A stretch of DNA of 64,000 bases from the NCBI GenBank assembly GCA_965637545.1, contig OZ281499.1, positions 558,001-622,000 on the forward strand, in the 5' to 3' direction. A model generated the notes under the pieces. It did not search any database and was not told where the DNA came from. It saw only the letters and a program-made list of their open reading frames with translations. A program made the position numbers and the translations under genes. Origin of the DNA: Phallusia mammillata (Eukaryota). Below, one piece after another: positions 3,249-54,477 of the stretch (positions are counted from its first letter, which is position 1; each line of letters begins with the position of its first letter).

Positions 3249-3342
3249 ATGCTGTGGTTACTGTTTCTTATGTTGGTCGTCGGATGCGCGGAAGGTGAAT
3301 GTCCGGGCGAGGATTTCAGTCTTGCTCCTCGACCTTATATAA
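3249..3342 (+). CDS. LDLa-repeat GPCR gene 1, exon 1 (signal peptide)
   Basis: ATG at 3249 encodes MLWLLFLMLVVGCAEGECPGEDFSLAPRPYI, then a phase-1 GTAAGT donor at 3343. Near-identical paralogous exon at 29343. Splices in frame to 7552. Confidence 0.88.
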
Positions 3343-7551: not shown

Positions 7552-10500
7552 AACCTGAAAATCTGTCGGTGTGCGAACCCCCATACAAAACATCCAACTG
7601 CACCTGCCCTTCTTCAATGTTCGAATGTGCTTGTCACAAGTTTGGTCGGTGTGGGGACAAACCAGGATGTATTGGGATGTGGAAGGTATATGACTTGAGT
7701 TCTTCACTGCGTGGGACTGGAGGTCATCGATTGTACGAATACGAAAACGACTGTGGTGATTGGAGCGACGAGTATAGTGAGGTTTGCCATGAAGGCAGGT
7801 TTCAGTGTGACTGCTTCAACACAACTTGCAAAGGTCATGTTGGGTGCGTGTGGGAGAGGTTGCGATGTGATGGAGTCATACATTGTTTAGATGGCAGTGA
7901 TGAAGTTAATTGCACTTGTCCAGCTCATAAGTTTGAATGCGATTGTTACAAAACAAACAACTGCAGAACTTACAATAGTGGATGCATGGGCAAGATGTAT
8001 CAATGTAATGGAAGAATAGAATGCATAGATGGCAGCGATGAAGTTAATTGCACTTGTCCAGCTCATAAGTTTGAATGTGATTGTTACAAAACAAAGAACT
8101 GTTCAACTTCAAGAGGTGGTTGCATCAACAAAGACTGGCAATGTGATGGATGGAATGACTGTGGAGATTTGAGTGATGAGGTTAATTGCATTTGTCCAGC
8201 TCGTAAGTTTGAATGCGATTGTTACAAAACAAGGAACTGTACAACTGGATATGGTTGCATCAACAAAAACAAGCAATGTAATGGATATAATAACTGTGGA
8301 GATTGGAGTGATGAAGTTAATTGCACTTGTCCTGCTAAAAAGTTTGAATGCCCTTGTTACAAAACAAAGAACTGCACAACTGGATATGGTTGCATTAACA
8401 AAGACAAGCAATGTAACGGATACAATGAATGTGGTGATTGGAGTGATGAAGTTAATTGCACTTGTCCAGCTCATAAGTTTGAATGTGATTGTTACAAAAC
8501 AAAGAACTGTACAACATACAAGCAGGGTTGCATTACCACAGCCAAGCAATGTAACGGATACAATGAATGTGGTGATTGGAGTGATGAAGTTAATTGCACT
8601 TGTCCAGCTGATACCTTTGAATGTGATTGTTACAAAACAAAGAACTGTTCAATTTTCATTGGTGGTTGCATCAACAAAGACAGGCAATGTAATGGATGGA
8701 ATGACTGTGGTGATTGGAGCGATGAAGTTAATTGCACTTGTCCAGCTCATAAGTTTCAATGTGCATGTGTTGGCAACAAACAATGTGACATCGATATGAA
8801 GGGAAGTTGTATTGACCGATCTTTGTTGTGTGATGGAAATCGTGACTGTTTTGACGGTAGTGACGAGACACATTACTCATGTAACTGCTCTGGAGTTTAT
8901 GCCAGATGTCCGTGTGATCCTGGTAACAAACATTGCCCATCTACTGGCAGATGCATATTTTTTGACTGGTTGGGTGATGGCTTTGAAGATTGCTATGATG
9001 CAAGCGACGAACTTTGTTCAGTTTCCAACTTCACTTGTCAGTCTTGCACAATGTTTGCCACAACTTGTAAGAGTGAACAACTTGCCAGGTATCTTGTACA
9101 TTCCACAGTTCCAGCAAAGTGCAACACAGTAATCCGACCATCATGTGCTGATGACATCAACAGTTGTGAAAGCAAGAATGTGATTTGCGTCACTTCCACC
9201 TGCAAAAAAACAGAAAAATTTTGTCAGAACATTTTTGTTTGTAAAAATAAAGAAGTCATCACTGAAAGTTCCTTTTGTGACTCAATTGGTAATTGTAATG
9301 ACAATAGTGACGAAATCAAGTCAGGATTTGGATTTAAATGCTCTGGATCATCGAGACAAGGTGTTTGTGTTTTGCCTCAAACCAACATTTACGATTCAGT
9401 GGCTCAATGTTCTGATAAATCTGATCTTTGTTTTGCCAACGGACAGTTTAGATGTTTTCAGTGCTTGGATAAAAAGTTAATCATATCACCCAAGCAAGTT
9501 TGTGACGGTATAGTGGACTGCTTTGATATGTCAGATGAGTGTTTGTGCTTGAATCAAAGTTTGTGTGATGATATAAGGGGTGGTTGTCCATCAAATCAGA
9601 TACATTGCCAAAATAAATCTGTTTGTTCATTTCAAAGTGGAAAGTTGTGTAATTCAAGTGTGCAATGTGTTGATCAAATAAACACAAAATACTGTTCGTC
9701 TGCTAATAATTTGGAACAAACTCAGTGTTTACCAGAAAATGTTGAAGACCTCGGACTTGACGAAATATTTAAGTGCGCAAAAACTGACAACAAAGCACTG
9801 AGGAGTAAATTTTCGAAATATTCAAATAAAAAAGTTTTGTTAAACTCCATATGTGATGGAATTATTGAGGACGACTTAAAACTACTTGGTGAAGTAAACT
9901 GTACAAATATGTTTTATTGTTTCTCAAATGGAAAGATCAGCATAAAAAACACCCAGGTTTGCGATGGAACAATTGATTGTGATGATGGCTCAGATGAATT
10001 TCCTGAACTTTGTCACAAAACTCGTTTTTATTGCAAGACCAAAAATTGGGTTTCTATTGACAGAAACACTTTTTGTGATGGAATTATCGATTGCGACAAC
10101 GAATCTGATGAAAGTAGATGTCGTTGTGAAAACAAAAGGTTTTATTGCACAAATAAACAACCTTTGTCAATTGAATGGAAACTGGTGCAGAATGGAATTC
10201 AAGATTGTTCAGATGGAAGTGATGAATGTGTAAACTTGGCTGGGGACGCATTTGCAGATATGAATGAAATGATTGCCAATCCCGTATACCAAGCAATTTT
10301 CTGGATAACAGCTATGCTAGCCTTGGGAGGAAATTTGTTTGTGTTCCTTGCAACTGCTCACAGCCTATGGAATGTAGACAGAAACAAAAATGTTTTCATT
10401 AACACTAATATTTTCATTCTCAACCTCTGTTGCTCAGATTTCCTCATGGGAATTTATCTGCTTGCAGTTATAGTGCAAGCCACACGATTTTCTGGCTCCT

Positions 10501-11438
10501 ACTGTTTGTTTGATAAGGAATGGAGATCAAGTAGTTTGTGTTCAGGGCTTGGAGCACTTGCAATTGTATCATCAGAAGGATCGGCCTTGACAATGACAGC
10601 CATGACCACTTTTCGTCTTGTATCAGCCTTTAAACCATTTATAATTCGAAGTGTAGGTGTTTACAGAATTTTACTTGCTGAATTGTTTTGCTGGATTTCG
10701 GCTGTTGTTTTGGCAACTGTTCCTTTACTAAAAGTTACTTCGCATTATTTTATAACTGATGTTCGGTTTCCAAACAACATTTTTGGAAATGATTTTGTTT
10801 CCAGGGAAAACATGTCACTTCTTGCAAAAAGAATTACCAATGTAGAGCCAGAAAGTTGGAATGATGTGAAACAAACTATCAAGCAAACGTTTCCTCGCAA
10901 CCCAATCGAAGGAGAGTTTGGATATTATGGAGAAACAAGCGTTTGTTTGCCACGTTTGTTTGCCACAACTAGTGAATTTGCTTGGGAATATTCAACTTTC
11001 CTCATCACAATCAACTTCCTCATGTTCATCTACATGGTGGTTGCATACGTTCTCATCTACAAACAAAGTAACCAGATGAAAGAATCCAGGAGCAATGATG
11101 TCAGCTCCAAGATGCAGAAGAGAATCTCAAGGTTGATTTTGACCGACTTCTGTTGCTGGATTCCAATTTGTGTCATGGGATATTTGAGTGTTGGAGGAAT
11201 CAAGATGCCACCAGATGCTTATGTGTTGAGTGCTTGTCTGTTGCTTCCAATCAACAGCGCTCTTAATCCCTTGCTTTACTCAAAAGCATTGGAAGATCAA
11301 CTTGTCAGGGCAAAGAAATGGCTAATGGAGAAATTATCCTCTCTACGGGCATCTACAAATCGTTCATCGGATTTAGCTGTGAAATACAACGCTGGTGCAG
11401 AGGAAGAGGGCGACAGAGTGATTGAAATAGTTGGGTGA
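7552..11438 (+). CDS. LDLa-repeat class A GPCR gene 1, main exon (GRL101/RXFP-like, LRR-less); spliced product 1326 aa
   Basis: Acceptor TACTACAG at 7551. Many LDLa motifs (CDG..DC.D.SDE) followed by a 7TM with NLCCSDFLMGIYL (TM2), WRSSSLC (ECL1/TM3), FCCWIP (TM6), PINSALNPLLY (TM7). Spliced length 3981 nt = 1327 codons. Confidence 0.95.
7917..8738 (+). repeat. Six coding tandem repeats of 135/138 bp (8-Cys LDLa variant) in gene 1
   Basis: CPAxxFECxCYKTxNC...GC......QC.G...C.D.SDEVNCx units start at 7917, 8055, 8193, 8328, 8463, 8601. Confidence 0.95.
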
Positions 11439-11502
11439 AAATAATAAAAACACAACCAAATGATAACTCGAAACTTTTTGCTGCAGTTACGAAGTAATAA
11501 AC

Positions 11503-17014: not shown

Positions 17015-17027
17015 CGAATATCCTTTC

Positions 17028-26600: not shown

Positions 26601-29342
26601 TAGGATTAAGTTACCCTAGTTTTGCGGGACGAATAAAAAATAGTCCAACTGCAGTTTGCAAATCGTGTGATGGAATAAATAAGTATTGTCAGTGAAGAAC
26701 TCTTTAATATTTCACACATTTGTAGCCTACTACCGGCATTTCACATTAGCACTATTCCACTGTAAATAAGTACTATTGCTGGTCCCGCAAATGCGCTTAG
26801 CGGACCAATGTTATAGAAAGCCGCTGTGTTATTATGCCTTGTCAGCTGTGGCCCTCGCTTGTCATTTTTCAGTTATTTGGCCGCTGTGAAAAAAGTTTAG
26901 TGACCCCTGCCACAGGGCGTCGCAAATTACATCTACCCTTTACTATTAATAAGATCGATGTTAACATTTGCAATGGTACATAGGATTGAATATATAGTGC
27001 GTAAATCCAGGATAGCTACTAACACAGGAACTCACATTAGCTAATTTCCGGTAGGTAGCGCAACAGAGAATTAGCGTTTGCATTAGCTATTGCACTGAGT
27101 CAGCTATTGCGCAATATGGCTATCGCAAACGCCAATGCTCGGAAACTAGCACGTCTGTAATGTGAGTTCCTGTGTTAGTAGCTCTACCCAAAAATCCAGT
27201 CTAGGGTTGGGATTTCGGGAACGGGATTTCCCGGGATTTTCACTTCCTAATCCAGGGATTTTTCGAAATACCAAGCTAAAAAGTACATTTAAAGCTGTTT
27301 TAACTAATTGACACGGTATCTTTTTAGTTGTTCTTTCCAAACTGAAACGAGCATTTTCGTGTGGTTGTGCGAATGAGCGATTTAGTGCAATATGTAAGTA
27401 GACACCAAGCCAACTAGCGTCGTATTTTATTATCTTTTTAGTTTACCGCGCTACTTAAAGTTGAGTTATGTTGTCACCATTAATTGTCTATTTATAGACG
27501 CAACGCGAAACATTTACGTGGTCGTAATGCTAACAAATCTTCAAGCCTCGGTATAATACATGTGGCCAGCACACAATAGTAGTAACATGATGTGTTATTT
27601 AAATCAATAATACTATGTCTGTGAATGTTATTCCATTCAAAGACCTTTTTTACCAATTTAGAACACATGCACCTTGATTTAGTGATATTACCTGGAAATG
27701 CAAGTCCATGCAGTGATTTCACTATAATAAACCCCTGACAGGGATTTAGAAAAAAGTGAAAAATACCGGGATTTGCCGGGATACCAACCCTTCTATTTTG
27801 ATATGAGGTTATCTGAGTTTTCCAATTTGCACACCACTGAATGTGTAGCGCAGTGACAACGCGTTAGAACGTTTGATGGTTCGCAGCATTGGCATTTATG
27901 ACCCACTAAAACAAATTGTTGGCAGAACTACCCAAGACGATTTTTCAATGTGTTTAATGGCAAAAGTTTCGCAATAAAGTTGTGAACAGAAAAATAAAAC
28001 ACTTGCGTTTCAAATGTGAGACATCGCAAAAAAAAACATTTTATTTCATCGATTTTATAAATTAATAATTGAATGTTTTCAAATTTGCAAACAAAACAAA
28101 ACTTTCCACGCAACACCCGAGACGACGAAATTCGAATTCCTCTTACGTTTTAGTTACTTTCGTCATATTATTAGATCGGGTTCGCGTAAACAGACTGGGT
28201 TTTGGCACAAACAATTTTCAGCGGAAACAGCGTCAGGCAAGTCAGGCTTTTACTCATAATTAATCATTCAGGAAGCGCTACGTTCAATATACGATGTGAT
28301 TATACACCGACCTTTTCTTAGTTAGAAACCACAATTGGTTAAACGTTTGCACACAAAGGCAAAGGCATAGTGAGAATCAAATCAGTAGTTGTTTTGGTTA
28401 TGTGAAGCGCAGATTAATAAACTTTGCCCTGCTACAAATCGGTCTCGGCCAGACAATGTAATGAAACATTCATTTAATGTAAAAGGTACTTTTATTCTTC
28501 AAAAATGAAACTTGTTTAACACATTGGCCACCATCACCGCAAGGCCTGTGATTTTAAACCTTAGGTGCAATTTTTCGTTTTTCTAGTTCAATAATTTACG
28601 CCAAATACCTGAAATTTCCTCCGTCTAAAGTTACCACAACCCAACCAATCAGGCAATCATGTCCGATCACGTGACTTTATTGGAGAAACGCGCATGGTTC
28701 GGTGTTTGGACAGTTGCTTAAAATGTAAAAAGTTTGTTCTGTGTATTATGACACGCATTCAGCGGGTTTTCTTAACAGCTTCGTACAATCAAATGGGGTG
28801 TATAACATGCACGAGTTTGCAGGACAAAAGCAGCCACGCTGCGCAGTATTGAATGAACAACACCTAAACAAATATTTTTGGTTAACGCTAAATATACATT
28901 TAGTCATTTACTTTATAAAACAAACGGTCAGAACGTGCACAGTGTAACGCAAATAGTGTGAGTGGATTTAGAAAACAAGCCCCATGACACCAGCGTGAAG
29001 ATAGAAGGCAGTGTTACGTAGAACCTGTCGTTTCCGTTTTATGACTAAAAATATTCTAAGAAAGTGGCTTTCCTTACAGTAACAGGGGGTACGTAGTATA
29101 TGTAGATTGAAGGGTGGACTTAATGCTAAATAGAATTCTGCGAGGTATTTTTCAGAACATAACAGCTAAACACTGTTGGGGTGTAAAACTATCTGTTGTG
29201 CAAAAAAAGTTCGTGTTGCTTTGGCAGCCTTGACAGAACATAGACTGAATGCGTCATCACTTGAATGTTTGCCTCTTGGCTTAATTTTTGCAACAAAATT
29301 AAACTAAGATCTTATGTTAACAGCAAAACGAAAAACTTAGAC

Positions 29343-29436
29343 ATGTTGTGGTTATTGTTTTCATTGTTGGTCGTCGGATGCGCGGAAGGTGAATGTCCGG
29401 GCGAGGATCTAAGTCTTGCACCGCGACCTTATACAA
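29343..29436 (+). CDS. LDLa-repeat GPCR gene 2, exon 1 (signal peptide)
   Basis: MLWLLFSLLVVGCAEGECPGEDLSLAPRPYT, then a phase-1 GTAAGT donor at 29437. In frame with the acceptor at 36538. Confidence 0.88.
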
Positions 29437-30840
29437 GTAAGTTTGTCTATTAGTTACGAAGTGTACACGCTATGACATTTCTTATTTATTACGTTTTAAC
29501 AATCGAATGGCCACCAGTTAAAATGCATTAAAATAAAGAGTAAAAACGAACACAAACAAGCAGCACAGATATAACGGTCAACAACATGCCTCGTGGGGGA
29601 ACGTCTCTTCCACAATTTCGCTTTTCCCTTTCATACAGTGACGTAACATAGAATGGCAATTATGACGTCAGAGAACGGTACCAAAATAAAATCGGTATAG
29701 TTCACCTCATAATGAAAGTAGCATGTGTAGCAATGTGTATAGTTCAATTGAATTAGCAAACGCAAAATGTACAAGAAATGCGGCTACAAGACACGTTTCT
29801 ACGATTACGTAAATGCTAGGGCGGGTAGTTTTGGAAAACACAATCAAAGGCCGCTAGACTTTAAAGGAAATACAAAATTGCCTTGACGTGTCAGATGTGT
29901 CGCTAAAATGAAAATACACATTGCTACACACGAAAGAATGGAAGTAAAACTAGAAGGGTGGCTTAGCATTTTGTTGTTGCATTTACACTATAACCTATTT
30001 TAAAACATTAATATACTTCCTATGCTTATTTTGTATTGGGTCCCATATTAGCCATCGTCTTTTATAACCTCAGTCGTTTCTGCAAGCAGAAACTCATGGG
30101 TCCCCACGCATGAAAGTTGAAAATAATGCAATTCAAGAGATAACCATGAGAAAGTCGGGTGTTGTTGGGTTCGACACACAAACTAAAAAATATATATACA
30201 AACCACAATGACTCAATCACTACTACTACAAAATTTCAGCCCAATCCACCAATGTTTTTTTTTGTTTTTTTTTAATCCGCCAATGTTTAAAATTTCGACC
30301 ACTAGAGGCCTCAATGTGTAACATACAATTGGTGGCCCTTGTAATACCATTGCGCCACAGAAATCTTTCGTTTGTGGTGCCCAGTAACATACAAATGCGT
30401 TTTACACTTTGGGGGCTTGTGGGGTAAATGTTAGGACTATAGGGTTGAACACAACAATCGACACCTATAAATGGCATACTACACAAGCTATCCAAATTTC
30501 AGCCAATTCTGACACTGTTTACAAACTCACCCCTTTCAGGGGGCTAGCGGGGTAAATACTGGGGTTATCAACAAAAACAAAGTGGGATGCACATCTACAT
30601 AACTATATCTACCATCTGTGTAAATTTCAGCCCAATCCATTAAACATTTGATGGAAAAACGATTCGGACAAACTTCGGGAAGAAAAAAAAAGGAAGGGGA
30701 CCCATAAAAATACTACATTTAAACCGCAACCCGTCATCAGCACAACACACACACACATACGCACAGCTTGGTAATATTTTTATTTAGGTTACAAAAGCGC
30801 GTTAGTACACATTATAAGTGTTAGCAAATTTAAGCCCCAC

Positions 30841-31054
30841 TGTAACGTTCCACACTTTTAGTAGGTCACCAAATCAGTTTTATTATCACCTTAGTTTGCC
30901 TGTACGATCTTATTCAAATAGAATCCAACGATTAAACACGATAATTAGAGATACAAAACACACACAGCAATATAGCCACACCACGAGACAAACGGGCGAC
31001 AACCTCACGTAATCTCGATACCAAAACTTAAACAGAGAAATCATAATCGTTACA
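30841..31054 (-). repeat. 3' LTR of the Gypsy element
   Basis: 7 mismatches out of 214 against the 5' LTR. Preceded on the minus strand by PPT AGGGGGGAG (31058-31066). Confidence 0.95.
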
Positions 31055-31069
31055 GAGCTCCCCCCTAAA

Positions 31070-34000
31070 TAGGTTTGCGACCCGCAAACTACAAAACAGG
31101 CTCGGCAATAACACATACACAAACGAACGACAAGAACGAAAAAGACGCAATAGCAAGACATTTGCACTCCCGTTAACCATAATCCCAATCGCCGAGGGCG
31201 GACACAACGACCACGCCGTGTATACTGCTCAGGCTGCCCAACAGACTGTGGAGCACCCACGATATCATCCATTTCGGGTTCATCCTCTGCCAGCGCCATA
31301 TCCTTCTGTGGCAACTCGTTACTTTCAGTTCCTGTTTCCTGATGGTCCCGCACATGGAATGGTTTTAACTTATCAAAGCTGACAAGCAGCCGACGGCGAC
31401 CCCAACAATGTGACTGAATCCGATACGTTGAGTCACTCAACACTTTAATGACTTTGAAAGGTCCAACCCAGGGTTTCCAAAACTTCTTACAAGTTCCCTT
31501 CGGCATCACCGGTTCGTGAAAATAGACGAGGTCGCCCACACGGAAAGGAGAACCATGAATTCGCTTATCGTACAATGCTTTTTGGCGTTTTTGCTGTGTC
31601 CAACCATGGTCACGCGCGATTTTAAATGCAGTGCGGAGATCTACTTGAATCTTCTCAGCGTAAGTTCCAGGTGTCACATCTTCTGGCGGATCATTTTGTT
31701 GAAGGTCAAGAGAAATTTCCATTTCACGACCATGCTGCATGAAGAATGAAGTGTAACCGGTCGTCTCGCTAACGCTACTGTTGTACGCCGCCATCACCAT
31801 CGGTAATCGCGTATCCCAATCTGTTCCATCAGCAGCGACTCCCGCACAAAGCATTTGTCCGATAGTTTTGTTCAGAAAGGAAATTCGTTCCGCGATCATT
31901 GTGAATCCTTTCTGGGATGCCCTGTTCACAGATCCACTTGAAAACAAGCTCATTTGCCACGGTTTCGGCACATTGATCTTTAATTGCACAGGCCTTTCCA
32001 TACTTAGTGAAGTAGTCCACCATAACCAGAATATATTTGTTGCCCAATTCAGATTCAGGCAGCGGTCCAACAATATCAATCCCGATCCGAGCATTTGGAT
32101 ATCCTACTCTGCTGGGAACCATGGGTGTACGACGTGCTTTCTGGGGCGATTTTCTGGATTGACAAACCGTACACGACCGACAAAAGGCGACGACCGCATC
32201 ATTAAGCCCCGGCCAATAATATCCTTGTCTAATTGGAGCCAATGTCCTGTTGACACCCATGTGTCCTGCCAATGGCTTGTTGTGAAACTCTTCCAGAATA
32301 ATTTTTCTTAATGCACATGGGACAATAGTTTGCAAACCCCTGTGAGGCTTTCCTGCTGCGTTTTCCGCACGTCGACACGCAACACCATCCTCCCTCAAAA
32401 CTAACATGTCCCACATGTTCCAATATGTACGGAGCTCCCTCGGTAGCCCGTCCAATTCGTTTGACGAAGGTCGCTCACCGCATTCCAACCACTGGATGAC
32501 GTGACTAATTACATCATCTTTCTTTTGGCAATCCAGAAAGTGTGAAGCACCTAGCTCTGCTCGAGTGCTAATTTCTTGGGTTAGCCGACATACTGGTTCT
32601 GACGCTGGAATGCGGGAAAGAGCATCGGCATTCTGATGTTTTCTGCCGGCTCGGTGAATAATCTCCAAATCATAAGCACGGTCTTCCAAGTAGGTAGGTG
32701 CGGTAATACTTCAAGAAAAACACCACCGCAAGTAACTCTTTGTGTGTAGTTGAGTAGCGACCTTCCGCCTTGCTTAATGTCCTGCTACCGTACGATAAGA
32801 CGTATTCGACCCCATCATGCACCTGGGAGAGGACAGCACCGATAGCCTTGTCGCTAGCGTCACAATCCAACACAAACTTTCCTTCATCCCTCGGAAACGC
32901 CAATATGGGAGCGGAAGTCAAACGGCATTTTAAGATATCGAAGCTTTCCTGGTGGGCCGAGCTCCATTTGAAACTGTTTTCACCGCCTGTTGCTACCAGT
33001 TTGTGCAGTGGGCATGCAATTCGGGCGAAATCCTTAATGAAACGTCGATAGTAGGACGCCAAACCCAAAAAGCTTCGCAGCTCAGTGACAGAACTCGGGA
33101 CGGCCCATTGTGTCACAGTCCATACCTTCCCCGGGTCAGGGCCCACCCCTTTATTACTCACAATGTACCCCAAAAAAGGAACTTCGTCACGGTTGCAGTT
33201 GACACACGGGTTTTAATTTCAACCCAGCACGCTTAAGGCGATTTAAAACTTTCCCCAAATTCTTAATATTGTCAGTCTCATTAGATGCGTAACACGAAAC
33301 ATCGTCAATATAGAACAAACAAATATCACCCAAACCCCTTAGCACAACAGCCATCAAACGCTGAAACGTGGCACAAGCATTAGTTAAACCAAATGGCAAG
33401 CGATTAAACTCATACAAACCGCTGTGTGTCGCAAATGCCGTTTTGTGTTATATCCCGACGTTTTGTGTTATGCCGTTTTGTGTTATATCCCGACGTCAAA
33501 TCCAGTGTTGAGAAAAATTTCGCACCTCCAAGGACATCTAATGTATCGTCGATACGAGGGAGGGGAAAGGAATCTTTTACCGTCGCACTATTGAGACGCC
33601 GATAGTCAACGCAAAACCGATAGGAACCATCAGGCTTCTGGACTAAAACAATTGGAGAACTCCAATCAGAAGAACTCGGCGAAATCACGTCGTATCGGAG
33701 CATCTTCTCCACCATTTTGTCAATCCTCTTCCGGTGCACGATCGGTGCCCTCCGGGGATGCTGTTTGATTGGTGGCCCAGTAGTTTCAATTCGGTGTTCA
33801 GCCAACTCGGTAAAACCCAGGTCGTCAGAATGCTGAGAAAACACTTCCCGGTGGTCCCACAGCAACTGGGCAAGGGTTTCCGGCTCAGCCAGCCTTAAGG
33901 AATCTCTTCGTACTTTAGCGCAGCTAAGAACCCTCGAAATTCATCGTCGCTCCAGTCGATGGGCGTGCCCTGTTCCCTTGAATCTTCTTTCCTCGACACA

Positions 34001-34798
34001 TCACGCACAGCCACGGATTCCTCAGGCATAACAGCCAGTTGGCCGAACCCAGCCACAGGATGAATCACACCAACGTTTGTACCTTTGTGTAGACAAACCG
34101 GTTCCTCAGACGTATTTAACGCACGCACAAGTAATTGACCATCGTCTGACTGTAAAAGGGACCTCGCACCTCGCACCTTCGAGTCTGGATTCGACTCGAA
34201 CATCCCGATGAGAGGGGATCTGTTTAACTTGCGGTTTCCAATATCTGCAGCGACAAAACTTTTACATCCAGCAGCTATTACTTGATCACAACTTGCATAA
34301 ACACGATAACAGAAGGACACACCTTGGCGAGACGTGAACGGCACAAATGCTCCACCAGCATGCAACACTCTCTGGGAGTACAGAACGTCACACTGGTGAG
34401 CCAACAGAAAGTCATGGCCAAGCAAGCAAGCGTTACCAGTCAGACTCCTGTTAACGAAGAAGTTACACAACACATCTAAACCACCGATCTTAACACGTAG
34501 TTCCGCCACACCATCAGCAGGAAGCAAGGTCGATCCATCCGCTTGGTACAAAACAGAGGTCGGTGCGGCCAAGGTGATCACTCGAGACCCTCTTACTCTT
34601 TCTAGAACGTCATAACTCATCAAACATACAGGTGACCCTGTATCCACTGTGAAAGTGATCCCTTGTTCTTGTACGCTTCCGAACACATACACTAACAGAA
34701 TCTGCGTCGTCAGGTTGACTCAGAGTAGCTAACGGAACTACATTGGTTGGGGTTGGGCCAGACTCCTCTCGCAATCTTCCAACCCATTTCCGTTTAAA
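31070..34798 (-). pseudogene. pol: Gypsy pol (protease, RT, RNase H, integrase), multiply frameshifted
   Basis: PR VDTGS (33895-34692); RT YRFCVDYRRLN and FYIDD (33187-33865); RH LDCDASD (32670-33173); IN GHMG, IGIDIVGPL and the GPF motif (30910-32689). Confidence 0.92.
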
Positions 34799-36203
34799 GC
34801 AGGGGTCACCAAACTTTTTTTACTGCGGGCCGGATAAGTTTAATAAAAATTTGCGCGGGCCGGACAGTTTACATGCCCCAGCGCCGTCTTCCCGAACTTA
34901 GCCCGCAAGGCAGTTTTGATAAGGGATCAAGATATGGTCTTTCTATACTCCCATTAAAAATCTGGTGGTGCGACTATTAAATTGTATAGTTAGTCTCATC
35001 TTACAAGCAATGTTTGTATATTACGTCATAAGTGACCTAAGAAAGCAATTGTTTGCGCACAATTGACACTTGTAGTCTTGTTTGTGACGTAACAAACTGG
35101 CTTTGGGTCAATCCTGGGCGTTGTAATCCCACAAAACAAGGTAATATTAATTCTACATATCGCGACAGGAAAACTTTCGTAAGAAGTAGATTATTTTTTA
35201 AAAGTTACAAAGTTATCAATGCGATTTGACAACCTAAAAAATGTGGTCGTGGGCCGGATGAAATGACCTCGCGGGCTGGATCTGGCCTGCGGGCCGTAGG
35301 TTGGTGACCCCTGGTTTAAAGGACAATTGCGCCGTATGTGGCCAGATTTGCCACATCCATAGCACGTGATATTGCTTGGGCGGTTGTATGAAACTCTTCT
35401 GGGAGGCGGAACTTTGGAGATACGTTGTAGCTTTTCCACAATCTCCTTCCTTGTCTCCTGCGTCTGGGTGTGCACCGCTAAGTTTTTCCAACCGATCGCC
35501 TATGGAAGGTTTGTTTTCCTGATTTACTCCATGTACCCTCTCCCCACTCCACTTTGAAGCAATTCCCAGCAGTTCAGAACCACGGCGATGTTTGTTGGCA
35601 GCCTCTATCAGTTCTTCCGGCGTCAGATTTTGGCCCACATTGAAAATGTAAAAAGCAAGATTCCTGTCCTGTAGACCACGGAAGAAAGCGCTGCATACAG
35701 TACGGTCACGTATTTGCATTACACTTTCCACAGTACTATCACCGTAGGCTAGACGAGCTATCTCACCCAATTCCCCCATGTAAGTTTCAATCGATTCACC
35801 CACTTTGTGCTTTCTCTCCATAAGCTTACACATGGCAGTGCTGCTATCAATTTCAGGTGCAAAATCTTGTTCTCAGGCGATTGCAAAAATACTTAAAATC
35901 TTGTTTTTGTTCTGCAGTGAGGTTTATTTTCTTTATAGCCAAACCAATTTCGGGCGCACAAAAAGTTGTTAAAGACATTGAACGCTGTTGCATGGGGATT
36001 TTAAGTAGGTCAGCAAAATTTTCAAAACTCACTAACCACGCTGCAAAATCATGTTTCCCATCAAATTGAACCGGTGTATTTTTCCATTTCGAAGAACAAG
36101 CTTTTGCCTCTTTTACCTTCTCATCACGACGTTCTGGGGTATCAAGGGGAGTTTTATTCGAAATTGAAGTAGATGGAAATGGTTCTCCTCCAGCTAAATC
36201 CAT
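34738..36203 (-). pseudogene. gag: Gypsy gag, frameshifted and interrupted by a MITE
   Basis: Fragments 35853-36203, 35234-35833 and 35191-35475, the last with the CCHC knuckle CYGCGKSGHIRRNC. Removing the MITE continues NCPLNGNGLEDCERSLAQPQPM to TAG at 34738-34740. Confidence 0.85.
34800..35313. mobile_element. hAT MITE inserted at the gag-pol junction
   Basis: TIR CAGGGGTCACCAA / TTGGTGACCCCTG; perfect TSD GTTTAAAG (34792-34799, 35314-35321). Confidence 0.93.
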
Positions 36204-36249
36204 TTTGTTTTCGTTTCTTTTGATGAATCAAGATAATCTTCTGAAATGG

Positions 36250-36264
36250 CCACCGCTGCCACCA
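36250..36264 (-). other. Primer binding site, tRNA-Leu type
   Basis: Minus strand TGGTGGCAGCGGTGG is complementary to ...CCACCGCUGCCACCA, the 3' end of metazoan tRNA-Leu(AAG/UAG) as I recall it. Confidence 0.8.
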
Positions 36265-36265
36265 C

Positions 36266-36479
36266 TGTAACGTTCCACACTTTTTGTGGGTCACAAAATC
36301 AGTTTTGTTATTACCTTAGTTTGCCCGTACGATCTTATTCAAATAGAATCCAACGATTAAACACGATAATTACAGATACAAAACACACACAGCAATATAG
36401 CCACACCACGAGACAAACGGGCGACAACCTCACGTAATCTCGATACCAAAACTTAAACAGAGAAATCATAATCGTTACA
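36266..36479 (-). repeat. 5' LTR of the Gypsy element
   Basis: Followed on the minus strand, after one nt, by the PBS. Confidence 0.95.
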
Positions 36480-36538
36480 CCCACTAAGTTCCTTTGAAAT
36501 ATTTAAGTTGCTTATATTATTTGTAACTTTACCCACAG

Positions 36539-39500
36539 AACCTGACAATCTCTCGGTGTGCGAGTGGCCGTACCGCGGTCCCAACTGCACCTGCCCTTCT
36601 TCAATGTTCGAATGTGCTTGTCACAAGTTTGGTCGGTGTGGCCAAAAACCAGGATGTATTGAGATGAATATATATGACAGGATTTTTTCATCCAATGGGC
36701 CTGGCAGTCCCGTATTGTCCAGTGCCAACAACAACTGTGGTGATTGGAGCGATGTATTTAGAGAGGTTTGTCCTGAAGGCTGGTTTCAGTGTGACTGCTT
36801 TAACACAACTTGTAAAGGATATGTTGGGTGTATGAGGAAGGAGCAGCGATGTGATGGAGAGATAGATTGTTTAGACAGAAGTGATGAAGTTAATTGCACT
36901 TGTCCAGCTCATAAGTTTGAATGCCTTTGTTACAAAACAAACAATTGCAAAATTGGATATGGTGGTTGCATCAACAAAGACTGGCAATGTGATAGATATA
37001 ATAACTGTGGAGATTGGAGTGATGAAGTTAATTGCACTTGTCCAGCTCATAAGTTTGAATGCCCTTGTTACAAAACAAACAACTGCACAACTGGATATGG
37101 TTGCATCTCCAAACACAGGCAATGTGATGGAACTAATGACTGTGGAGATTGGAGTGATGAAGTTAATTGCACTTGTCCAGCTTACGAGTTTGAATGTGAT
37201 TGTTACAAAACAAAGAACTGCACAACTAGACATGGTTGCATCAACAAAGACAGGCAATGTGATAGTTATAATCACTGTGGAGATTGGAGTGATGAAGTTA
37301 ATTGCACTTGTCCAGCTCCTAAGTTTGAATGTGATTGTTACAAAACAAAGAACTGTACAACTAAACAAGGTTGCATCAACAAAGACTGGCAATGTGATAC
37401 ATATAATGACTGTGGAGATTGGAGTGATGAAGTTAATTGCACTTGTCCAGCTCATAAGTTTGAATGTGATTGTTACAAAACAAAGAACTGTACACATCCA
37501 TGGGGTGGTTGTATCGTCAAAGACAGGCAATGTGATGGAAATAATGACTGTGAAGATGGGAGTGATGAAGTTAATTGCACTTGTCCAGCTCATAAGTTTG
37601 AATGTGATTGTTACAAAACAAAGAACTGTACACGTTCATGGGTTGGTTGCATCAACAAATTCCTGCAATGTAATGGAAGAAATGACTGTGGAGATTTGAG
37701 TGATGAAGTTAATTGCACTTGTCCAGCTCATAAGTTTGAATGTGATTGTTATAAAACAAAGAACTGCACAACTGCATGGGGTGGTTGCATCTACAAAGAC
37801 CAGCATTGTGATGGATATAATGACTGTGGAGATTGGAGTGATGAAGTTAATTGCACTTGTCCAGCTCATAAGTTTGAATGCGATTGTTACAAAACAAAGA
37901 ACTGTACAACTTACAGTGGTTGCATCAACAAAGACAGGCAATGTGATGGAAATAATAACTGTAGAGATTACAGTGATGAAGTTAATTGCACTTGTCCAGC
38001 TCATAAGTTTCAATGTGCATGTGTTGACACGAAACAATGCAATATCAGTATAGAGGGAAGTTGTATTGACCGGACTTTATTATGTGATGGAAATCAGGAC
38101 TGTTTTGATGGAAGTGATGAGACATATTACACGTGTAACTGCTCTGGAGTTTACTCAAGATGTCTGTGTGATCCTGGAAACAAACACTGTCCATCTACTG
38201 GCAGATGCATACCATTTGATTGGATTGGTGATGGATTTAAGGATTGCTACGATGGGAGTGACGAACTTTGTTCAGTTTCCAACTTCACATGTCAATCTTG
38301 CACAATGTTTGCCACAACTTGTAAGAGTGAACAAATTGCCAGGTATCTTGTGCATTCCACAGTTCCAGCAGAGTGCAACACAGTAATCCAACCATCATGT
38401 GCTGATAACATCAACAGTTGTGAAAGCAAGAATGCGATTTGCATCTCTTCAAACTGCGAAAAAATAGAAAATTTTTGCAAGAAACTATTTATATGTGAAA
38501 ACCAACAATTCCTTCCCAGCAGTTCATTTTGTGACTCAGTTACTAGTTGTAGTGACAATAGTGATGAAATCAAGTCAGGATTTGGATTTAAATGTCCTGG
38601 ATCATCAAGACGAGGTGTTTGTGTTTTGCCCCAAGCCAATATTTACGATTCAGTGGCTCAATGTTCTGATAAATCTGATCTTTGTTTCGTCAACGGACAG
38701 TTCAGATGTTTTCAGTGCTTGGATAAAAAGTTAATCATATCATCCAAGCAAGTTTGTGATGGTATAGTGGATTGCTTTGATATGTCAGATGAGTGTTTGT
38801 GTTTGAATCAAAGTTTGTGTGATGAGATAAGGGGTGATTGTCCATCAAATCAGCTGCATTGCCAAAATAAATCTGTCTGTTCTATTGCAGGTGGAGTGTT
38901 GTGCAATTCAAGCATACAGTGTGTTGATCAAGTAAACATGAAATACTGTTCTTCTGAAAATATCTTGGAAGAAACTCAGTGTTTTCCAGAAAACGTTAAA
39001 AGTCTCGTTGAAAGATTTGATGAAATATTTTGGTGTGCAAAAACAGACAACAAAGTGCTGAGGAGAGAGTTTCAAAATCAGCTTTTACAAAGGAAAGATG
39101 GCAAAGTTCTGATGAACTCAATATGTGACGGCATTATTGGGGATGACCTAAAACTAATTGGTGAAGTTAACTGTCCAAATATGTTTTATTGTTTCTCAAA
39201 TGGAGACATCAACATAAAAAGCACTCAGGTATGCGACGGAAAAGTTGATTGTGATGACAGCTCAGACGAATTTCAAGAACTTTGTCACAAAACGCGGTTT
39301 TATTGTAAAAGCAACAGAAAATTGTCAATTGACAGAAAAACTGTTTGTGATGGAATTATCGACTGTGACAATGAATCTGATGAAAGTAAATGTCAATGCG
39401 AAAAAAAAAGATTTTATTGCACAAATGAACAACCTTTGTCGATTGAATGGAAACTGGTGCAGAATGGAATTCAAGATTGTTCTGATGGAAGTGATGAATG

Positions 39501-40710
39501 TGTAAACTTGGCTGGGGACGCATTTGCAAATGTCAATGAAATGATTGCCAATCCAATTTACCGAGCAATTTTCTGGATAACAGCTGTATTGGCCTTGGGA
39601 GGAAATCTGTTTGTGTTCATCGCAACTGCCCAGAGCTTATGGAATGTAGACAGAAACAAAAACATTTTTATTAACACTAGTGTTTTCCTTCTCAACCTCT
39701 GTTGCTCAGATTTCCTTATGGGAATTTATCTGCTTGCAGTTATAGTGCAAGCCACACGATTTTCCGGCTCTTATTGTTTGTTTGATAAAGAATGGAGATC
39801 AAGTAGTTTGTGTTCCGGGCTTGGAGCACTTGCAATTGTATCATCAGAAGGATCAGCCTTGACAATGACAGCCATGACCACTTTTCGCCTTGTATCAGCT
39901 TTCAAACCATTTACAATTCGAAGTGTAGGAGTCTCTAAAATTATATTTACTGAAATATGTTGCTGGATTTTAGCTGTAGTTTTGGCAACCGTTCCTTTAC
40001 TCAAAGTCACTTCGGAATATTTTACAACTGATGTTTGGTTTCCAAACAACATTTTTGGAAATGACTTTGTTTCCTGGGAAAACATGTCACTTCTTGCAGA
40101 AAGAATTACCGATATAAGACCCAAAAATTGGAATGATGTAAAACAAACTATCAAGGAAACATTTCCTCGCGACCCAATCAAAGGGGAGTTTGGATATTAT
40201 GGAGAAACAAGTGTCTGTTTGCCACGTTTGTTTGCCACAACCAGTGAATTTGCTTGGGAATATTCAACTTTCCTTATCACAATCAACTTCCTTATGTTTA
40301 TCTACATGGTTGTTGCATATGTTCTCATTTACAAGCAAAGTAATCGCATGAAAGAATCCAGAAGCAATGATGTCAGCTCCAAAATGCAGAAGAGAATCTC
40401 AAGATTGATATTAACAGATTTCTGCTGCTGGATTCCAATTTGTGTCATGGGATACTTAAGTATTGGAGGAATCAAAATGCGACCGGATGCTTATGTGTTA
40501 AGCGCTTGTCTGTTGCTTCCAATCAACAGCGCCCTTAATCCCTTGCTTTACTCTAAAGCAATAGAAGATCAACTTGTCAGGGCAAAGAAATGGCTGGTGG
40601 AGAAATTGTCCATTATACGGGCATCCACAAATCGTTCATCTGATTTAGCTGTGAGATACAACGCTGGTGCAGAGGAAGAAGGCGACAGAGTGATTGAAAT
40701 AGTTGGATGA
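36539..40710 (+). CDS. LDLa-repeat class A GPCR gene 2, main exon; spliced product 1421 aa
   Basis: Acceptor ACCCACAG at 36538. Same architecture as gene 1, 7TM/C-tail about 90% identical by eye. Spliced length 4266 nt = 1422 codons, uninterrupted. Confidence 0.95.
36901..37992 (+). repeat. Eight coding tandem repeats of 135/138 bp (8-Cys LDLa variant) in gene 2
   Basis: Unit lengths 46,45,45,45,46,46,46,45 aa; the next, divergent module starts at 37993. Confidence 0.95.
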
Positions 40711-41063: not shown

Positions 41064-42582
41064 TATTGAACCATGTTATTGTTGGTCTGTTTTTATTATG
41101 AAAAATGCTTCTGTAAATAATGGTTACCAGGTGTGGTGTCATTTGTGAAATATTTGTGTGCATGTGATAACAAGTTGTACAGAAGTGTTATTTATTCACT
41201 TGACGACAATATTTAATCAAAGCAAGTTGTAAAGATTGTTATTTACAGAAGAACAACAGCATTTCAGGTGTGAAGCAAGGTTATAAAAATGAAAAGTTAA
41301 AAAGCATCTCAAGATGTGTGTCCCTACATTACAATAGTGAATAAAACTCATTAGTTTTATTGTTAACACATCAAGAGGAGACAAAACAAAGTAAAGTCAC
41401 ACACTTGGGAATGTTTTCATCCCTCTAATTCTTTCGTGATATTTAACAGCAACCAATTAATTTATTTTATAAACACTAACCTGGTTTAAACCAGATTTGA
41501 TAAACAAAACACTTGTGGATTCAGATTTACTTTGAAACAGATTGGAGAACTTTAGCTGAACTACAAAAGAAAACATATATTGCAAAAAAACTATTTTCGT
41601 TTAGTAGGGGACGTTGTCACTAAGGAACAAACCACTTAAACCTATTGGTTGCACTGGAATAGTCACAAATTTTAAAATCTCTTGCTTGTCTAAAACTTTG
41701 CACTACCATCCAAATACACAAAGATACTTACATGTATCAACCACCATAAAAACAAAATAGAAGGTAATTACTTAGTTTTCTAACCAAAAATGTATGAAAA
41801 ACGACTATAGTGGTTATACCATGATATTGGTTTGCTAAGAACAGTCGGCTTTGTTATTCTAATAAACAAACCAACAAATATTTTGTTTGGTTACTGTTAA
41901 AAGATTGACCAGTATTTTGAACTAAAAAGTATCAAAACATATCGGCTGAAGTAATACATTATTCCAATTTTGTAAAATCTCAAGTAAACCCAGTTTTAAG
42001 AACAAAAAAAGATAAAATAAAAGTTACACTAATAATGGTGGGCTTAATGGAGAAATTTACTCACTGTTTAACCAACCCTAAACTTTATTCAAATTAATTT
42101 TTGAGGCACAAAAGCCCATGTTCAAATATATGTTTATTACTAATAGTAAAACAAGAGTTTTTATCAGCATAATATATGTCTGTTTCGTAAAAAAAAATAA
42201 CACCCATAAGTTTTGGTTGCAAATCTTTTGAAACTAAACTATAACTGCGATTACCGAATATAATTAATAAAAGTTTAAAAATCGGTATTACACAACTTTT
42301 TAAAACCCTTTCAGGTGATCTGACAATTGGAAAATACGGTTTGTGTCATCAAACAAACAATGTCATAATACTAAAGCGGGGCCAACTAAAAGTCTACGAA
42401 AGCGCCGTTTTTTGGTGAACAACAACAAAAACGCAGCTAATTACTGTTTAGGGTTGGGGTTCTCTAATACCTTTTTCTTGTATACCAAAATTTACCTAAT
42501 CAATACTTTATACAGCAAGTAATCAATTTTTAAAAACTTTTACATTAAATGACCCTTTACCGGCACTTTTATAGTTTGTTTT

Positions 42583-53896: not shown

Positions 53897-54091
53897 TTTC
53901 TGTGTGTGTTATATTGTTTCTATGGTTGACTGTTTTGTTACTAACAAGTGCGAAGAACTGATAGTTTCGTTTATAAATTTTATCATGCACATAAATTGCT
54001 TATACTGGCTGCAGGATTGCAAGAGAAGTGCAGCACGTGTCCAATCTTTACTGCAACATAGTTCTTTGGTAGACCCGGTGGATGGTAACAG

Positions 54092-54477
54092 TAGGGACGG
54101 GTCAAAACTGCAAATGTTCTGTTTGGTCGAGCACCGAGCGTCTCACGATAATGCTCGGTGCATTATGACGCCACAAACATTCCCGATTTCACGCCAGTTT
54201 TGCAGCTTTTCAAGGTCCCTTACGTCACCAGCGGTGTATTAAGCTGTACAGGCCCCAGAAGTACGCGTTTGTCACAAACTAACATTCTAACGCATATAAA
54301 AAGGCCATTTTTGTTCTGGGATACCCTTTAGAACACTATCGTATGATAGCAGGGCACAAATATGCAAATTTAATACCCGGGTCAGTTTGTGCAACTGCTC
54401 GGCCGAGCACCGAGCATTAAAAACAGCGATGCTCGGTACCGAGTAGTCGGGTTTTGGTTCGGTTCGGCCCATCCCTA
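54092..54477. mobile_element. hAT (TAGGGATG-type) MITE; copies at ~60310-60676 and 62578-62942 (inverted)
   Basis: TAGGGACGGG / CCCATCCCTA termini; TSD GGTAACAG / GTTAACAG. The 62578 copy has TSD CTGGTAAC / CTGGTAAG. Confidence 0.85.

What the first reader, a model, noticed from the sequence alone, without database searches (positions are those of the whole stretch)
36901..37992. Paralog 2 has eight modules with a different loop repertoire and cassettes shuffled relative to gene 1
Seen: loops are KIGYGG, TTGYG, TTRHG, TTKQG, THPWGG, TRSWVG, TTAWGG, TTYSG. The cassette CCCTTGTTACAAAACAAAxAACTGCACAACTGGATATGGTTGCAT (PCYKT.NCTTGYGC) is in repeat 4 of gene 1 but repeat 2 of gene 2. GDLSDE is in repeat 2 of gene 1 and repeat 6 of gene 2. 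NKDWQC is in repeat 2 of gene 1 and repeats 1 and 4 of gene 2. Repeats do not align positionally between paralogs, though flanking modules and the 7TM do. Inference: unequal exchange or gene conversion through the shared framework gives combinatorial ectodomains on a conserved signalling unit.
Basis: partly seen in the sequence, partly recalled or inferred. Interest (0 to 1): 0.7.

Follow-up and report, generated by a model that had tools for sequence, protein, structure and literature searches.

The report
Sea-squirt receptor with fast-evolving repeat array
Gene 2 is an intact sea-squirt receptor of a known orphan family, and its eight-repeat tip differs from its neighbour's mainly through recent local repeat duplication followed by fast amino-acid change in the binding loops, not through swapping of ready-made cassettes between the two genes.

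Summary
Every literal observation holds. Gene 2 (exon 2 at 36539-40710) carries eight 45-46-aa LDL-receptor class A modules at 36895-37986, with exactly the listed loops.

Both genes belong to the tunicate LDLRR-GPCR family described in Ciona in 2008. This family has an LDLa array, no leucine-rich repeats and a relaxin-receptor-like 7TM core. This genome holds at least 100 copies, and this scan has already noted the family several times on other DNA here.

- **Not sisters.** Genes 1 and 2 are not sister genes (dS 0.36).
- **No positional pairing.** Their modules do not pair by position.
- **No exchange tract.** No significant exchange tract links the two arrays (best P 0.24).
- **Motifs weak as evidence.** NKDWQC is the family consensus. 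The P/TTGYG cassette is a module type also present in two genes on another contig. GDLSDE recurs nine times genome-wide.
- **Private loops.** Seven of gene 2's eight loops are unique among 95 modules.
- **Young array.** Gene 2's array has within-array dS 0.13 and adjacent sister modules. Hypervariable positions show 41.5 replacement against 1.5 silent changes.

Unequal exchange in arrays is real elsewhere in the family. Examples are the L036/L037 step, the L037 block repeats and the mosaic of gene 1 modules 4 and 5.

The parts
29343..29436 (+). Gene 2 exon 1 (94 nt). It holds the start codon and a signal-peptide-like MLWLLF..VVGCAEG stretch, then a GTAAGT donor in phase 1.
   Evidence: The only strongly conserved block upstream of both genes. 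ATG, donor and reading frame were checked. Splicing is predicted, not shown by RNA.
36539..40710 (+). Gene 2 exon 2, holding the whole mature receptor. It follows a polypyrimidine tract and CAG acceptor.
   Evidence: Single open frame. Pfam gives LDLa x15 plus rhodopsin-type 7TM. The acceptor is conserved with gene 1. The joined model of 1421 codons has no internal stop.
36539..36894 (+). N-terminal framework of two divergent LDLa-like modules, conserved across paralogs. It holds a length-variable insert.
   Evidence: Alignment of 19 paralogs. 80% nucleotide identity to gene 1.
36895..37986 (+). The eight-module array. Modules lie at 36895-37032, 37033-37167, 37168-37302, 37303-37437, 37438-37575, 37576-37713, 37714-37851 and 37852-37986. 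Each is an LDLa domain with two extra cysteines, and a single residue separates it from the next.
   Evidence: LDLa by sequence and by fold. Within-array dS is 0.13. Adjacent sister pairs 1+2, 3+4 and 5+6.
37062..37106 (+). The 45-nt P/TTGYG cassette in gene 2 module 2.
   Evidence: Exact match apart from the free base. The same 45-mer occurs four times in L037. Its 35-nt core occurs seven times in the genome.
37987..39483 (+). Conserved post-array ectodomain. It holds further LDLa modules and cysteine-rich linkers, plus a second poorly conserved stretch at about 38890-39340.
   Evidence: Pfam. Paralog alignment and sliding identity, with median identity 73-76% in that stretch.
39484..40710 (+). 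Seven-helix core and C-terminal tail, related to the relaxin receptor.
   Evidence: PF00001. Best solved relative is RXFP1 7tmw, E 2e-26, followed by the TSH, LH and FSH receptors. 85-92% amino-acid identity to dozens of paralogs.
3249..3342 (+). Gene 1 exon 1 (signal peptide).
7552..11438 (+). Gene 1 exon 2. Its six-module array is at 7911-8732 and its copy of the cassette is at 8351-8395.

Best explanation
Gene 2 is an intact member of the ascidian LDLRR-GPCR family. It has a signal peptide and an N-terminal framework. These are followed by a tandem array of eight LDL-receptor class A modules and a conserved LDLa stalk. It ends in a relaxin-receptor-like seven-helix core and has no leucine-rich repeats.

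Its array differs from gene 1's because each array has had its own history of module gain and loss. Replication slippage or unequal crossing-over between the near-identical module frameworks is the likely cause. Genes 1 and 2 separated long ago (dS about 0.36). Gene 2 kept at least four or five module lineages that other paralogs also carry, then doubled three of them locally. This gives the adjacent sister pairs 1+2, 3+4 and 5+6, with dS about 0.08.

After duplication the copies diverged almost only by amino-acid replacements at the family's hypervariable positions. These positions are the extra disulfide-bounded loop, the residues around the canonical LDLa tryptophan, and the acidic calcium and ligand pocket. 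That pattern fits selection for new binding specificities.

Shown here: the anatomy, family membership, lack of positional pairing, the young and silent-site-homogeneous array, the excess of replacements, and exchange break points in arrays of other family members. Inferred: that the variable residues bind ligands, that selection is for ligand diversity, and that signalling runs through the conserved stalk and 7TM.
For: **Family and anatomy**
- Pfam gives LDLa x15 plus 7tm_1 and no LRR. RXFP1 is the best solved relative.
- The modules match LRP2, VLDLR and LDLR by sequence and by fold.
- The nearest named proteins are from Ciona, Clavelina and Styela. The family is described in PMC2396169.
- At least 102 matches to the 7TM part in this genome, most inside open frames of 1100-1450 aa.

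**Separate array histories**
- Genes 1 and 2 are not sisters. In one segment gene 1 pairs with L031 (97/88) and gene 2 with L034 (100/98).
- Non-array dS between them is 0.358, and divergence is even along both genes.
- The module difference matrix has no diagonal.
- AU tests disfavour several positional pairs and also a single origin of all gene 2 modules (p 0.028).

**Recent local growth of the gene 2 array**
- Within-array dS is 0.131, against 0.235 for random eight-module sets (P 0.024; label permutation P 0.014).
- Adjacent sister pairs have 87-90% bootstrap support, and pair 3+4 is starred in the full tree. Pooled dS of the three pairs is 0.076.
- In the 101-module tree, six of the starred sister groups are adjacent modules of one gene.

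**Replacement excess**
- At the 13 columns defined as variable on the other 20 genes only, gene 2 shows 41.5 replacement against 1.5 silent minimal changes. The per-site ratio is about 5 (P 0.007). The framework ratio is 0.46.
- 68 distinct loops among 95 modules; seven of gene 2's eight are private.

**Exchange in arrays elsewhere in the family**
- L036/L037 step (Fisher P 8e-26), L037 duplicated blocks, and the gene 1 module 4/5 mosaic (global P 0.036).
Against: - Modules have only about 135 informative-poor columns, so most tree nodes are unresolved. The adjacent sister pairs are not all starred.
- The AU p-values (0.014-0.045) would not survive correction for ten tests.
- Whole-module dN/dS in gene 2 is about 1.1-1.6 and not significant on its own.
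- Low silent divergence inside gene 2 could also come from intragenic gene conversion rather than recent duplication.
- A PHI test on the 14 window modules is significant (P 0.002 at a 30-nt window). Some sub-module mosaicism therefore exists, and I could only localise it to gene 1.
- No RNA, haplotype or binding data were obtainable. The public runs gave only 40-240-nt unitigs.
- Only 22 of at least 100 paralogs could be read in full.
Confidence: 0.7

Rival explanations
1. Pre-existing sub-module cassettes are moved between gene 1 and gene 2, and among other paralogs, by gene conversion or unequal exchange through the invariant framework. New ectodomains are then new combinations of old cassettes.
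For: - The three motifs are at non-corresponding positions.
- PHI on the 14 modules gives P 0.002. Two silent Cys-codon sites 24 nt apart show all four combinations within gene 2.
- Third-position PHI across the gene bodies of 21 paralogs gives P 0.002.
- L036/L037 show that a different array can sit on a near-identical signalling unit.
- Gene 2 modules 1 and 2 are closer to L037 modules (7-9 differences) than to any gene 1 module.
Against: - No gene 1 to gene 2 fragment is significant (best P 0.24).
- The motifs are family-modal or recurrent states.
- The GDLSDE pairing dissolves in the reduced tree.
- Seven of eight loops are private, and no module is identical in protein between different genes apart from the near-identical pair L048/L049.
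- PHI on 93 modules is not significant.
- Between-gene array dS (0.24, CI 0.17-0.34) is not clearly below gene-body dS (0.345).
- Silent sites inside the variable codons are no older than framework silent sites in gene 2.
Confidence: 0.15
2. There was no exchange at all. The two arrays are collinear descendants of one ancestral array. Two modules were inserted or deleted, and the loops have diverged beyond recognition.
For: - Some positional pairs are not rejected: N-register 3-3 (p 0.20), C-register 6-8 (p 0.27) and 2-4 (p 0.23).
- The best single pair, gene 1 module 2 with gene 2 module 4 (12 differences), lies on the C-terminal register.
- Gene divergence is old and even.
Against: - Other positional pairs are disfavoured (p 0.014-0.045).
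- Adjacent modules of gene 2 are each other's sisters.
- Within-array dS of 0.13 is far below the 0.36 between the genes.
- The P-type module is fourth in gene 1 but first and second in gene 2.
- Gene 1's other modules group with L033 and L034 modules rather than with gene 2's.
Confidence: 0.08
3. The array is an artefact or a relic. Either the tandem repeat was misassembled, or gene 2 is a decaying pseudogene whose repeats drift freely.
For: - No read or contig spanning the array could be obtained.
- An LTR retroelement ends 59 nt upstream of the exon 2 acceptor.
- No RNA evidence.
Against: - The 1421-codon frame is intact.
- Framework dN/dS is 0.16-0.46 and gene-body dN/dS is 0.23.
- All cysteines and the SDE motif are kept in all eight modules.
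- Modules differ by at least 11 of 135 nt, so they can be placed uniquely.
- The contigs are tens of megabases long.
Confidence: 0.03

Closest known systems
Ciona LDLRR-GPCR cluster (Kamesh, Aradhyam and Manoj 2008, BMC Evol Biol 8:129; PMC2396169)
   Same: Rhodopsin-family 7TM most like the relaxin/INSL3 receptors. It has 1-10 tandem LDL-A repeats at the N-terminus and no leucine-rich repeats. It is tunicate-specific and orphan. The nearest named homologues of gene 2 are Ciona proteins at 35-39% identity.
   Different: The paper lists 14 confirmed members in Ciona, whereas this genome has at least 100. The paper truncated the receptors to their TM regions for its tree and, in the passages I read, does not analyse the repeats' hypervariable loops, their selection or array turnover. 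The array module here has eight cysteines and a one-residue linker.
Vertebrate relaxin-family receptors RXFP1/RXFP2 (type C LGRs; PDB 7tmw)
   Same: Best solved relative of the 7TM (E 2e-26). An LDLa module is part of the ectodomain. In RXFP1/2 that module is needed for signalling, as cited in PMC2396169.
   Different: RXFP1/2 have one LDLa and a leucine-rich-repeat domain that binds the hormone. Gene 2 has about 15 LDLa modules and no LRR. No relaxin-type ligand is implied.
Lymnaea GRL101 and GRL101-like receptors
   Same: Several LDLa repeats on an LGR-type 7TM. Styela homologues of gene 2 are labelled GRL101-like by their source.
   Different: GRL101 also carries LRRs (PMC2396169). The ascidian genes do not.
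LDL-receptor family ligand-binding arrays (LDLR, VLDLR, LRP2/megalin; for example PDB 2fcw, 8jut, 8yw1)
   Same: Same module fold and the same calcium and acidic motif. Tandem modules bind ligands through the tryptophan and acidic pocket (established knowledge of LDLa-ligand complexes; 2fcw is among the fold hits).
   Different: The modules here have an extra cysteine pair bounding an added variable loop. They vary at the tryptophan and pocket positions themselves. They are joined to a GPCR rather than to an endocytic receptor.
Repeat-array receptors that evolve by birth and death with diversifying selection (for example LRR arrays of plant resistance genes)
   Same: It works alike. Repeat number changes by unequal exchange, a conserved scaffold carries solvent-exposed hypervariable positions, replacements are in excess, and the genes form large clustered families.
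   Different: A different fold and kingdom. No link to immunity is shown here. This is an analogy from general knowledge, not a tested homology.

Membership tests
Tunicate LDLRR-GPCR (Kamesh et al. 2008) | Rhodopsin-family 7TM most similar to the relaxin/INSL3 receptors | tested here: met
   PF00001 E 8e-15. Best PDB sequence hit is RXFP1 7tmw, E 2e-26, ahead of TSHR, LHCGR and FSHR.
Tunicate LDLRR-GPCR (Kamesh et al. 2008) | One to about ten tandem LDL-A repeats in the N-terminal ectodomain | tested here: met
   PF00057 with 15 stretches, E 2e-65. Eight of these are the array. That total is more than the 2-10 quoted for Ciona.
Tunicate LDLRR-GPCR (Kamesh et al. 2008) | No leucine-rich repeats | tested here: met
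   No LRR family at E 0.01 or better in the Pfam scan of either gene.
Tunicate LDLRR-GPCR (Kamesh et al. 2008) | Closest relatives are tunicate proteins of the same architecture | tested here: met
   Hits P0001-P0077 all carry PF00057 and nearly all PF00001. The named ones are Ciona intestinalis, Clavelina lepadiformis and Styela clava. LRR-bearing relaxin-receptor-like proteins appear only at E 5e-39 or weaker.
LDL-receptor class A module (PF00057) | Six-cysteine pattern with the C-terminal D-x-S-D-E acidic motif | tested here: met
   All eight modules keep the cysteines and SDE. Residue-level alignment to LRP2 modules. Two extra cysteines per module are an addition.
LDL-receptor class A module (PF00057) | LDLa fold | tested here: met
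   AlphaFold2 model of modules 6-8 has mean pLDDT 76.7. Foldseek hits VLDLR, LRP2 and LDLR tandem modules at probability 1.0, E down to 5e-9. Disulfide pairing was not inspected.
LDL-receptor class A module (PF00057) | Calcium binding and ligand docking on the Trp and acidic pocket | not testable with these tools
   Pocket positions are partly substituted. Column 40 is D 57 / N 43. Column 44 is D 53 with the rest N, H, S or E. The Trp column holds 12 different residues.
Type C LGR (RXFP1/2) | Leucine-rich-repeat hormone-binding domain between the LDLa and the 7TM | tested here: not met
   No LRR detected. So gene 2 is a relative of the 7TM core, not a member.
Cassette-exchange (gene-conversion) diversification between paralogs | Statistically supported shared tracts between donor and acceptor that are younger than the flanks | tested here: not met
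   For gene 1 against gene 2 the best run is 23 polymorphic sites, global P 0.24. The only significant tract is inside gene 1. The feature is met for another pair, L036/L037.
Cassette-exchange (gene-conversion) diversification between paralogs | Variable segments drawn from a shared pool | tested here: not met
   58 of 68 loop types are singletons. Seven of eight gene 2 loops are private among 95 modules. Only 22 of at least 100 genes were sampled.

The most novel reading that the evidence does not exclude
The ascidian LDLRR-GPCRs may form a germline-encoded, rapidly diversifying recognition repertoire of at least 100 genes. On this reading the distal LDLa arrays are hot spots of unequal exchange, and they are under positive selection at the ligand pocket. 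New array and signalling-unit combinations arise continually, as in L036/L037. In Ciona most ESTs of the family came from blood and haemocytes (PMC2396169), so the repertoire could serve non-self, microbial or chemical recognition. That would make it a GPCR-based diversified receptor system in the closest invertebrate relatives of vertebrates.
Probability: 0.2. Interest if true: 0.75.

Novelty: new member of a known kind. Interest (0 to 1): 0.4.

Why it matters
The gene family is known but orphan. What ascidians use more than a hundred LDLa-array GPCRs for is an open question, and they lack vertebrate-type olfactory receptors.

This window gives a clean small case of how the ligand-facing tip evolves. 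Local module duplication is followed by very fast replacement at the positions that form the ligand pocket in LDL-receptor modules, all on a slowly evolving signalling unit.

The case also corrects an attractive but unsupported idea, that cassettes were shuffled between these two genes. It points to a better natural experiment in the same genome. L036 and L037 have near-identical stalk and 7TM but completely different arrays. That pair would let ligand specificity be assigned to the array.

Tried and rejected
1. **Public reads.** The one run search found no run holding more than 41% of the sampled words. Laying four runs gave only 40-240-nt unitigs that match many paralogs. No piece spans the array, so there was no test of haplotype repeat number, assembly or expression.
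2. **More paralogs.** All family statistics therefore rest on 22 of at least 100 genes.
3. **PHI on 93 modules.** It was not significant, and it is confounded because hypervariable sites cluster, which makes neighbouring sites more incompatible.
4. **Array dS against gene-body dS.** I tested whether arrays are homogenised between genes. The result was inconclusive: 0.24 (CI 0.17-0.34) against 0.345, and 15% of 45-codon windows of the gene body are as low.
5. **Segment trees of the gene body.** I looked for supported conflicts involving gene 1 or gene 2 and found none. Both stay in a five-gene clade with L031, L033 and L034.
6. **Position labels on the module tree.** First, internal and last labels show no clustering. 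There is only a weak tendency for first modules to be the 46-aa type (P 0.04).
8. **Spliced model.** The joined two-exon coding sequence was built only inside a script to check frame and length. It was not sent to any search. Searches used exon 2 by reference, and exon 1 was not searched.
9. **Species name.** I could not verify the name. I could only confirm that the nearest named relatives are ascidian.
Full report
**What is there**

The window comes from contig C6 of a 240-Mb eukaryotic genome. It holds two same-strand genes 29 kb apart. Each is one long open frame: 7569-11438 and 36508-40710. Pfam finds 12 and 15 LDL-receptor class A stretches plus a rhodopsin-type 7TM, and no leucine-rich repeats.

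Upstream of each gene lies one conserved block. It holds an ATG, a signal-peptide-like stretch and a GTAAGT donor (3249-3342 and 29343-29436). This block fits, in phase, a polypyrimidine/CAG acceptor at 7552 and at 36539. The predicted models are two-exon genes of 1326 and 1421 codons without internal stops. I joined the exons only in a script to check frame and length. Splicing is predicted, not observed.

**Check of the observation**

Gene 2 has eight 45-46-aa modules at 36895-37986, and gene 1 has six at 7911-8732. The 6 x 8 matrix of nucleotide differences has no diagonal. Values run from 12 to 37 of about 135, and the best pair is gene 1 module 2 with gene 2 module 4.

**What the module is**

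Each unit is an LDLa domain by sequence, aligning to LRP2, VLDLR and LDLR. It is also LDLa by fold. The AlphaFold2 model of modules 6-8 has pLDDT 76.7 and hits VLDLR, megalin and LDLR tandem modules at Foldseek probability 1.0.

The unit has two extra cysteines between canonical cysteines II and III. These bound a short segment that is followed by the hypervariable loop. The sixth cysteine is separated from the next module's first cysteine by a single residue.

Across 101 modules from 22 paralogs, the variable columns fall in three places:
- the loop;
- the residues around the canonical LDLa tryptophan, a column that itself holds 12 different residues;
- the x positions and one acidic position of the D-G-x-x-D pocket.

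A related unnamed protein (P0007, from an ENA assembly; 41% identity) has the same eight-cysteine modules, variable at the same places.

**Which family**

The 7TM is closest to the relaxin receptor RXFP1 (7tmw, E 2e-26), then to the glycoprotein-hormone receptors. Public proteins with the same architecture are at most 43% identical. The named ones are from Ciona intestinalis, Clavelina lepadiformis and Styela clava.

This is the LDLRR-GPCR cluster that Kamesh et al. defined in Ciona in 2008. It has 14 confirmed members, single or 2-10 tandem LDL-A repeats, no LRR and a relaxin/INSL3-receptor-like TM region. It is orphan, and most ESTs came from blood and haemocytes (PMC2396169). It is the only paper in the searchable library that uses the term.

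In this genome the 7TM part finds at least 102 matches, most inside open frames of 1100-1450 aa and mostly on contig C3. Earlier notes of this scan reached the same family assignment on other DNA of this genome and name the species Phallusia mammillata. I did not verify the species name.

**Are genes 1 and 2 a meaningful pair?**

They are old duplicates. Non-array dS is 0.358 and dN 0.082. Identity is even along the genes, at 80-90% from exon 1 to the 3' flank.

They are not sisters. With L031, L033 (both on C6) and L034 (on C1) they form a five-gene clade. In the most variable segment gene 1 pairs with L031 (97/88) and gene 2 with L034 (100/98). Arrays of gene 2's nearest relatives also lack a diagonal against it.

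**The three 'shuffled cassettes'**

- **NKDWQC** is the column-wise consensus. It occurs in 10 of 101 modules in six genes.
- **The 45-nt cassette** is the P-type short module carrying the family's commonest loop, TTGYG (14 of 95 modules). The exact 45-mer occurs four times in L037. Its 35-nt core occurs seven times genome-wide in four genes: gene 1, gene 2, and L037 and L047 on C3. Proline at column 12 is linked to a silent TGC in the preceding codon and to the 45-aa length (21 of 24 modules). So this is a real module lineage. In the reduced tree gene 1 module 4 is sister to gene 2 modules 1+2 (71/87). The position shift is therefore genuine, but it needs only different gains and losses on either side of a shared module.
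- **GDLSDE** is one G-to-T change. It occurs nine times in the genome with at least three different silent contexts. Its tree pairing (83/81 in the full tree) disappears in the reduced tree, where gene 2 module 6 pairs with module 5.

**Tests for exchange**

A GENECONV-like search scored the longest run of matching polymorphic sites over all registers, with site order permuted for the null. It finds one significant tract. This runs from the 3' half of gene 1 module 4 into module 5, matched against gene 1 modules 5-6 (global P 0.036). The two modules visibly share five linked changes there, including silent ones, while their 5' halves differ. The best gene 1 to gene 2 tract has P 0.24.

| PHI test | Result |
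|---|---|
| 14 window modules | P 0.002 |
| 93 unique modules | not significant |
| Third positions of the gene bodies | P 0.002 |

AU tests disfavour several strict positional pairs in both registers (p 0.014-0.045) but not all. They also disfavour a single origin for all eight gene 2 modules (p 0.028). These p-values are uncorrected. Position labels (first, internal, last) do not cluster on the module tree. As a control, the near-identical genes L048 and L049 pair module by module.

**How gene 2's array was built**

Silent divergence among its eight modules is 0.131. That compares with 0.365 inside gene 1, 0.26 between the two arrays and 0.235 for random eight-module sets (P 0.024; label permutation P 0.014).

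Adjacent modules are sisters: 1+2 at 90/74, 3+4 at 87/81 (starred 98/86 in the full tree) and 5+6 at 88/76. Their pooled dS is 0.076. Family-wide, six of the starred sister groups are adjacent modules of one gene.

I defined variable columns on the other 20 genes only, to avoid circularity. At those 13 columns gene 2 shows at least 41.5 replacement against 1.5 silent changes. The per-site ratio is about 5 (P 0.007). The framework ratio is 0.46.

Seven of gene 2's eight loops occur nowhere else among 95 modules. 58 of the 68 loop types are singletons. No module protein is shared between different genes apart from L048/L049. The best non-self match to the whole array in the genome is 78% identical, against 92% for the 7TM.

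The simplest reading is recent local duplication followed by rapid, selected replacement at the pocket positions. Intragenic conversion cannot be excluded as the cause of the low silent divergence. However, silent sites inside the variable codons are not older than framework ones.

**Exchange does happen in the family**

L036 and L037 lie 39 kb apart on C3. Their pattern of identity shows a sharp step:

| Region (L036 against L037) | Identity |
|---|---|
| From about 23 nt inside the last array module to the stop codon | 11 differences in 2715 nt |
| 3' flank | 98-99.6% |
| N-terminal part and 5' flank | 93.5% |

The step is significant (Fisher P 8e-26). The arrays hold 3 against 7 modules, with 7-17 differences per module pair. 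L037 itself contains identical and near-identical module copies, a recent block duplication. So tract ends and unequal exchange do fall in arrays, and a different array can sit on a nearly identical signalling unit.

**Verdict**

The thing is a new member of a known orphan family. Its array evolves in a familiar way, by repeat birth and death with diversifying selection. The scan has found this family several times before on other DNA of this genome.

**Limits**
- Only 22 of at least 100 genes were read in full.
- Modules are short, so trees are weakly resolved.
- There are no RNA, haplotype or binding data.
- The species name was not verified.
- The search for homologous proteins only sees proteins of 0.55-1.75 times the query length.

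Noticed in passing
window 30837-36479 (minus strand): A Ty3/gypsy-type LTR retroelement lies in intron 1 of gene 2. It has gag-like and pol-like ORFs (protease, RT, integrase) and 218-nt LTRs at 30837-31054 and 36262-36479 that are 97% identical. Its end is only 59 nt upstream of the exon 2 acceptor, so it may affect splicing of gene 2.
   Followed up: partly
L036 (G000:C3:796771-801748) and L037 (G000:C3:835488-840465): Two paralogs 39 kb apart are 99.6% identical from inside the last array module through the 3' flank, but 93.5% identical upstream. They carry 3 against 7 modules. This is a natural array swap on one signalling unit. L037 also has identical internal module copies.
   Followed up: partly
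window 38890-39340 (and the matching part of gene 1, about 9640-10090): There is a second poorly conserved stretch in the post-array ectodomain, a non-LDLa linker. Median nucleotide identity among paralogs is 73-76% there, against 85-92% elsewhere. This is the segment where gene 1 pairs with L031 and gene 2 with L034.
   Followed up: partly
window 16922-27095: Two copies of a 5079-bp unit lie in tandem at 99.4% identity (16922-22000 and 22001-27095), between the two genes. Other parts of 12186-18352 also recur at 23450-28543.
   Followed up: no
window 501-1751: A tandem array with a 143-nt period, 8.6 copies and 96% matches. Higher-order periods of 291 and 439 nt are also reported.
   Followed up: no
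window 15090-15121: A short interstitial run of AACCCT (5.3 copies), which is telomere-repeat-like.
   Followed up: no
window 11498-11792 / 61833-62123 and 18393-18810 / 41488-41911: Dispersed repeats at 86-88% identity lie just downstream of both receptor genes and elsewhere in the window. Part of the apparent 3'-flank homology of the two genes may be repeat-derived.
   Followed up: no
window 53334-54242 (plus strand): An open frame of 302 aa that I did not examine.
   Followed up: no
L034 (G000:C1:30536867-30541850): The open frame of this paralog starts inside the array. A second match upstream carries a TAG. It may have more than seven modules or a broken 5' part.
   Followed up: no
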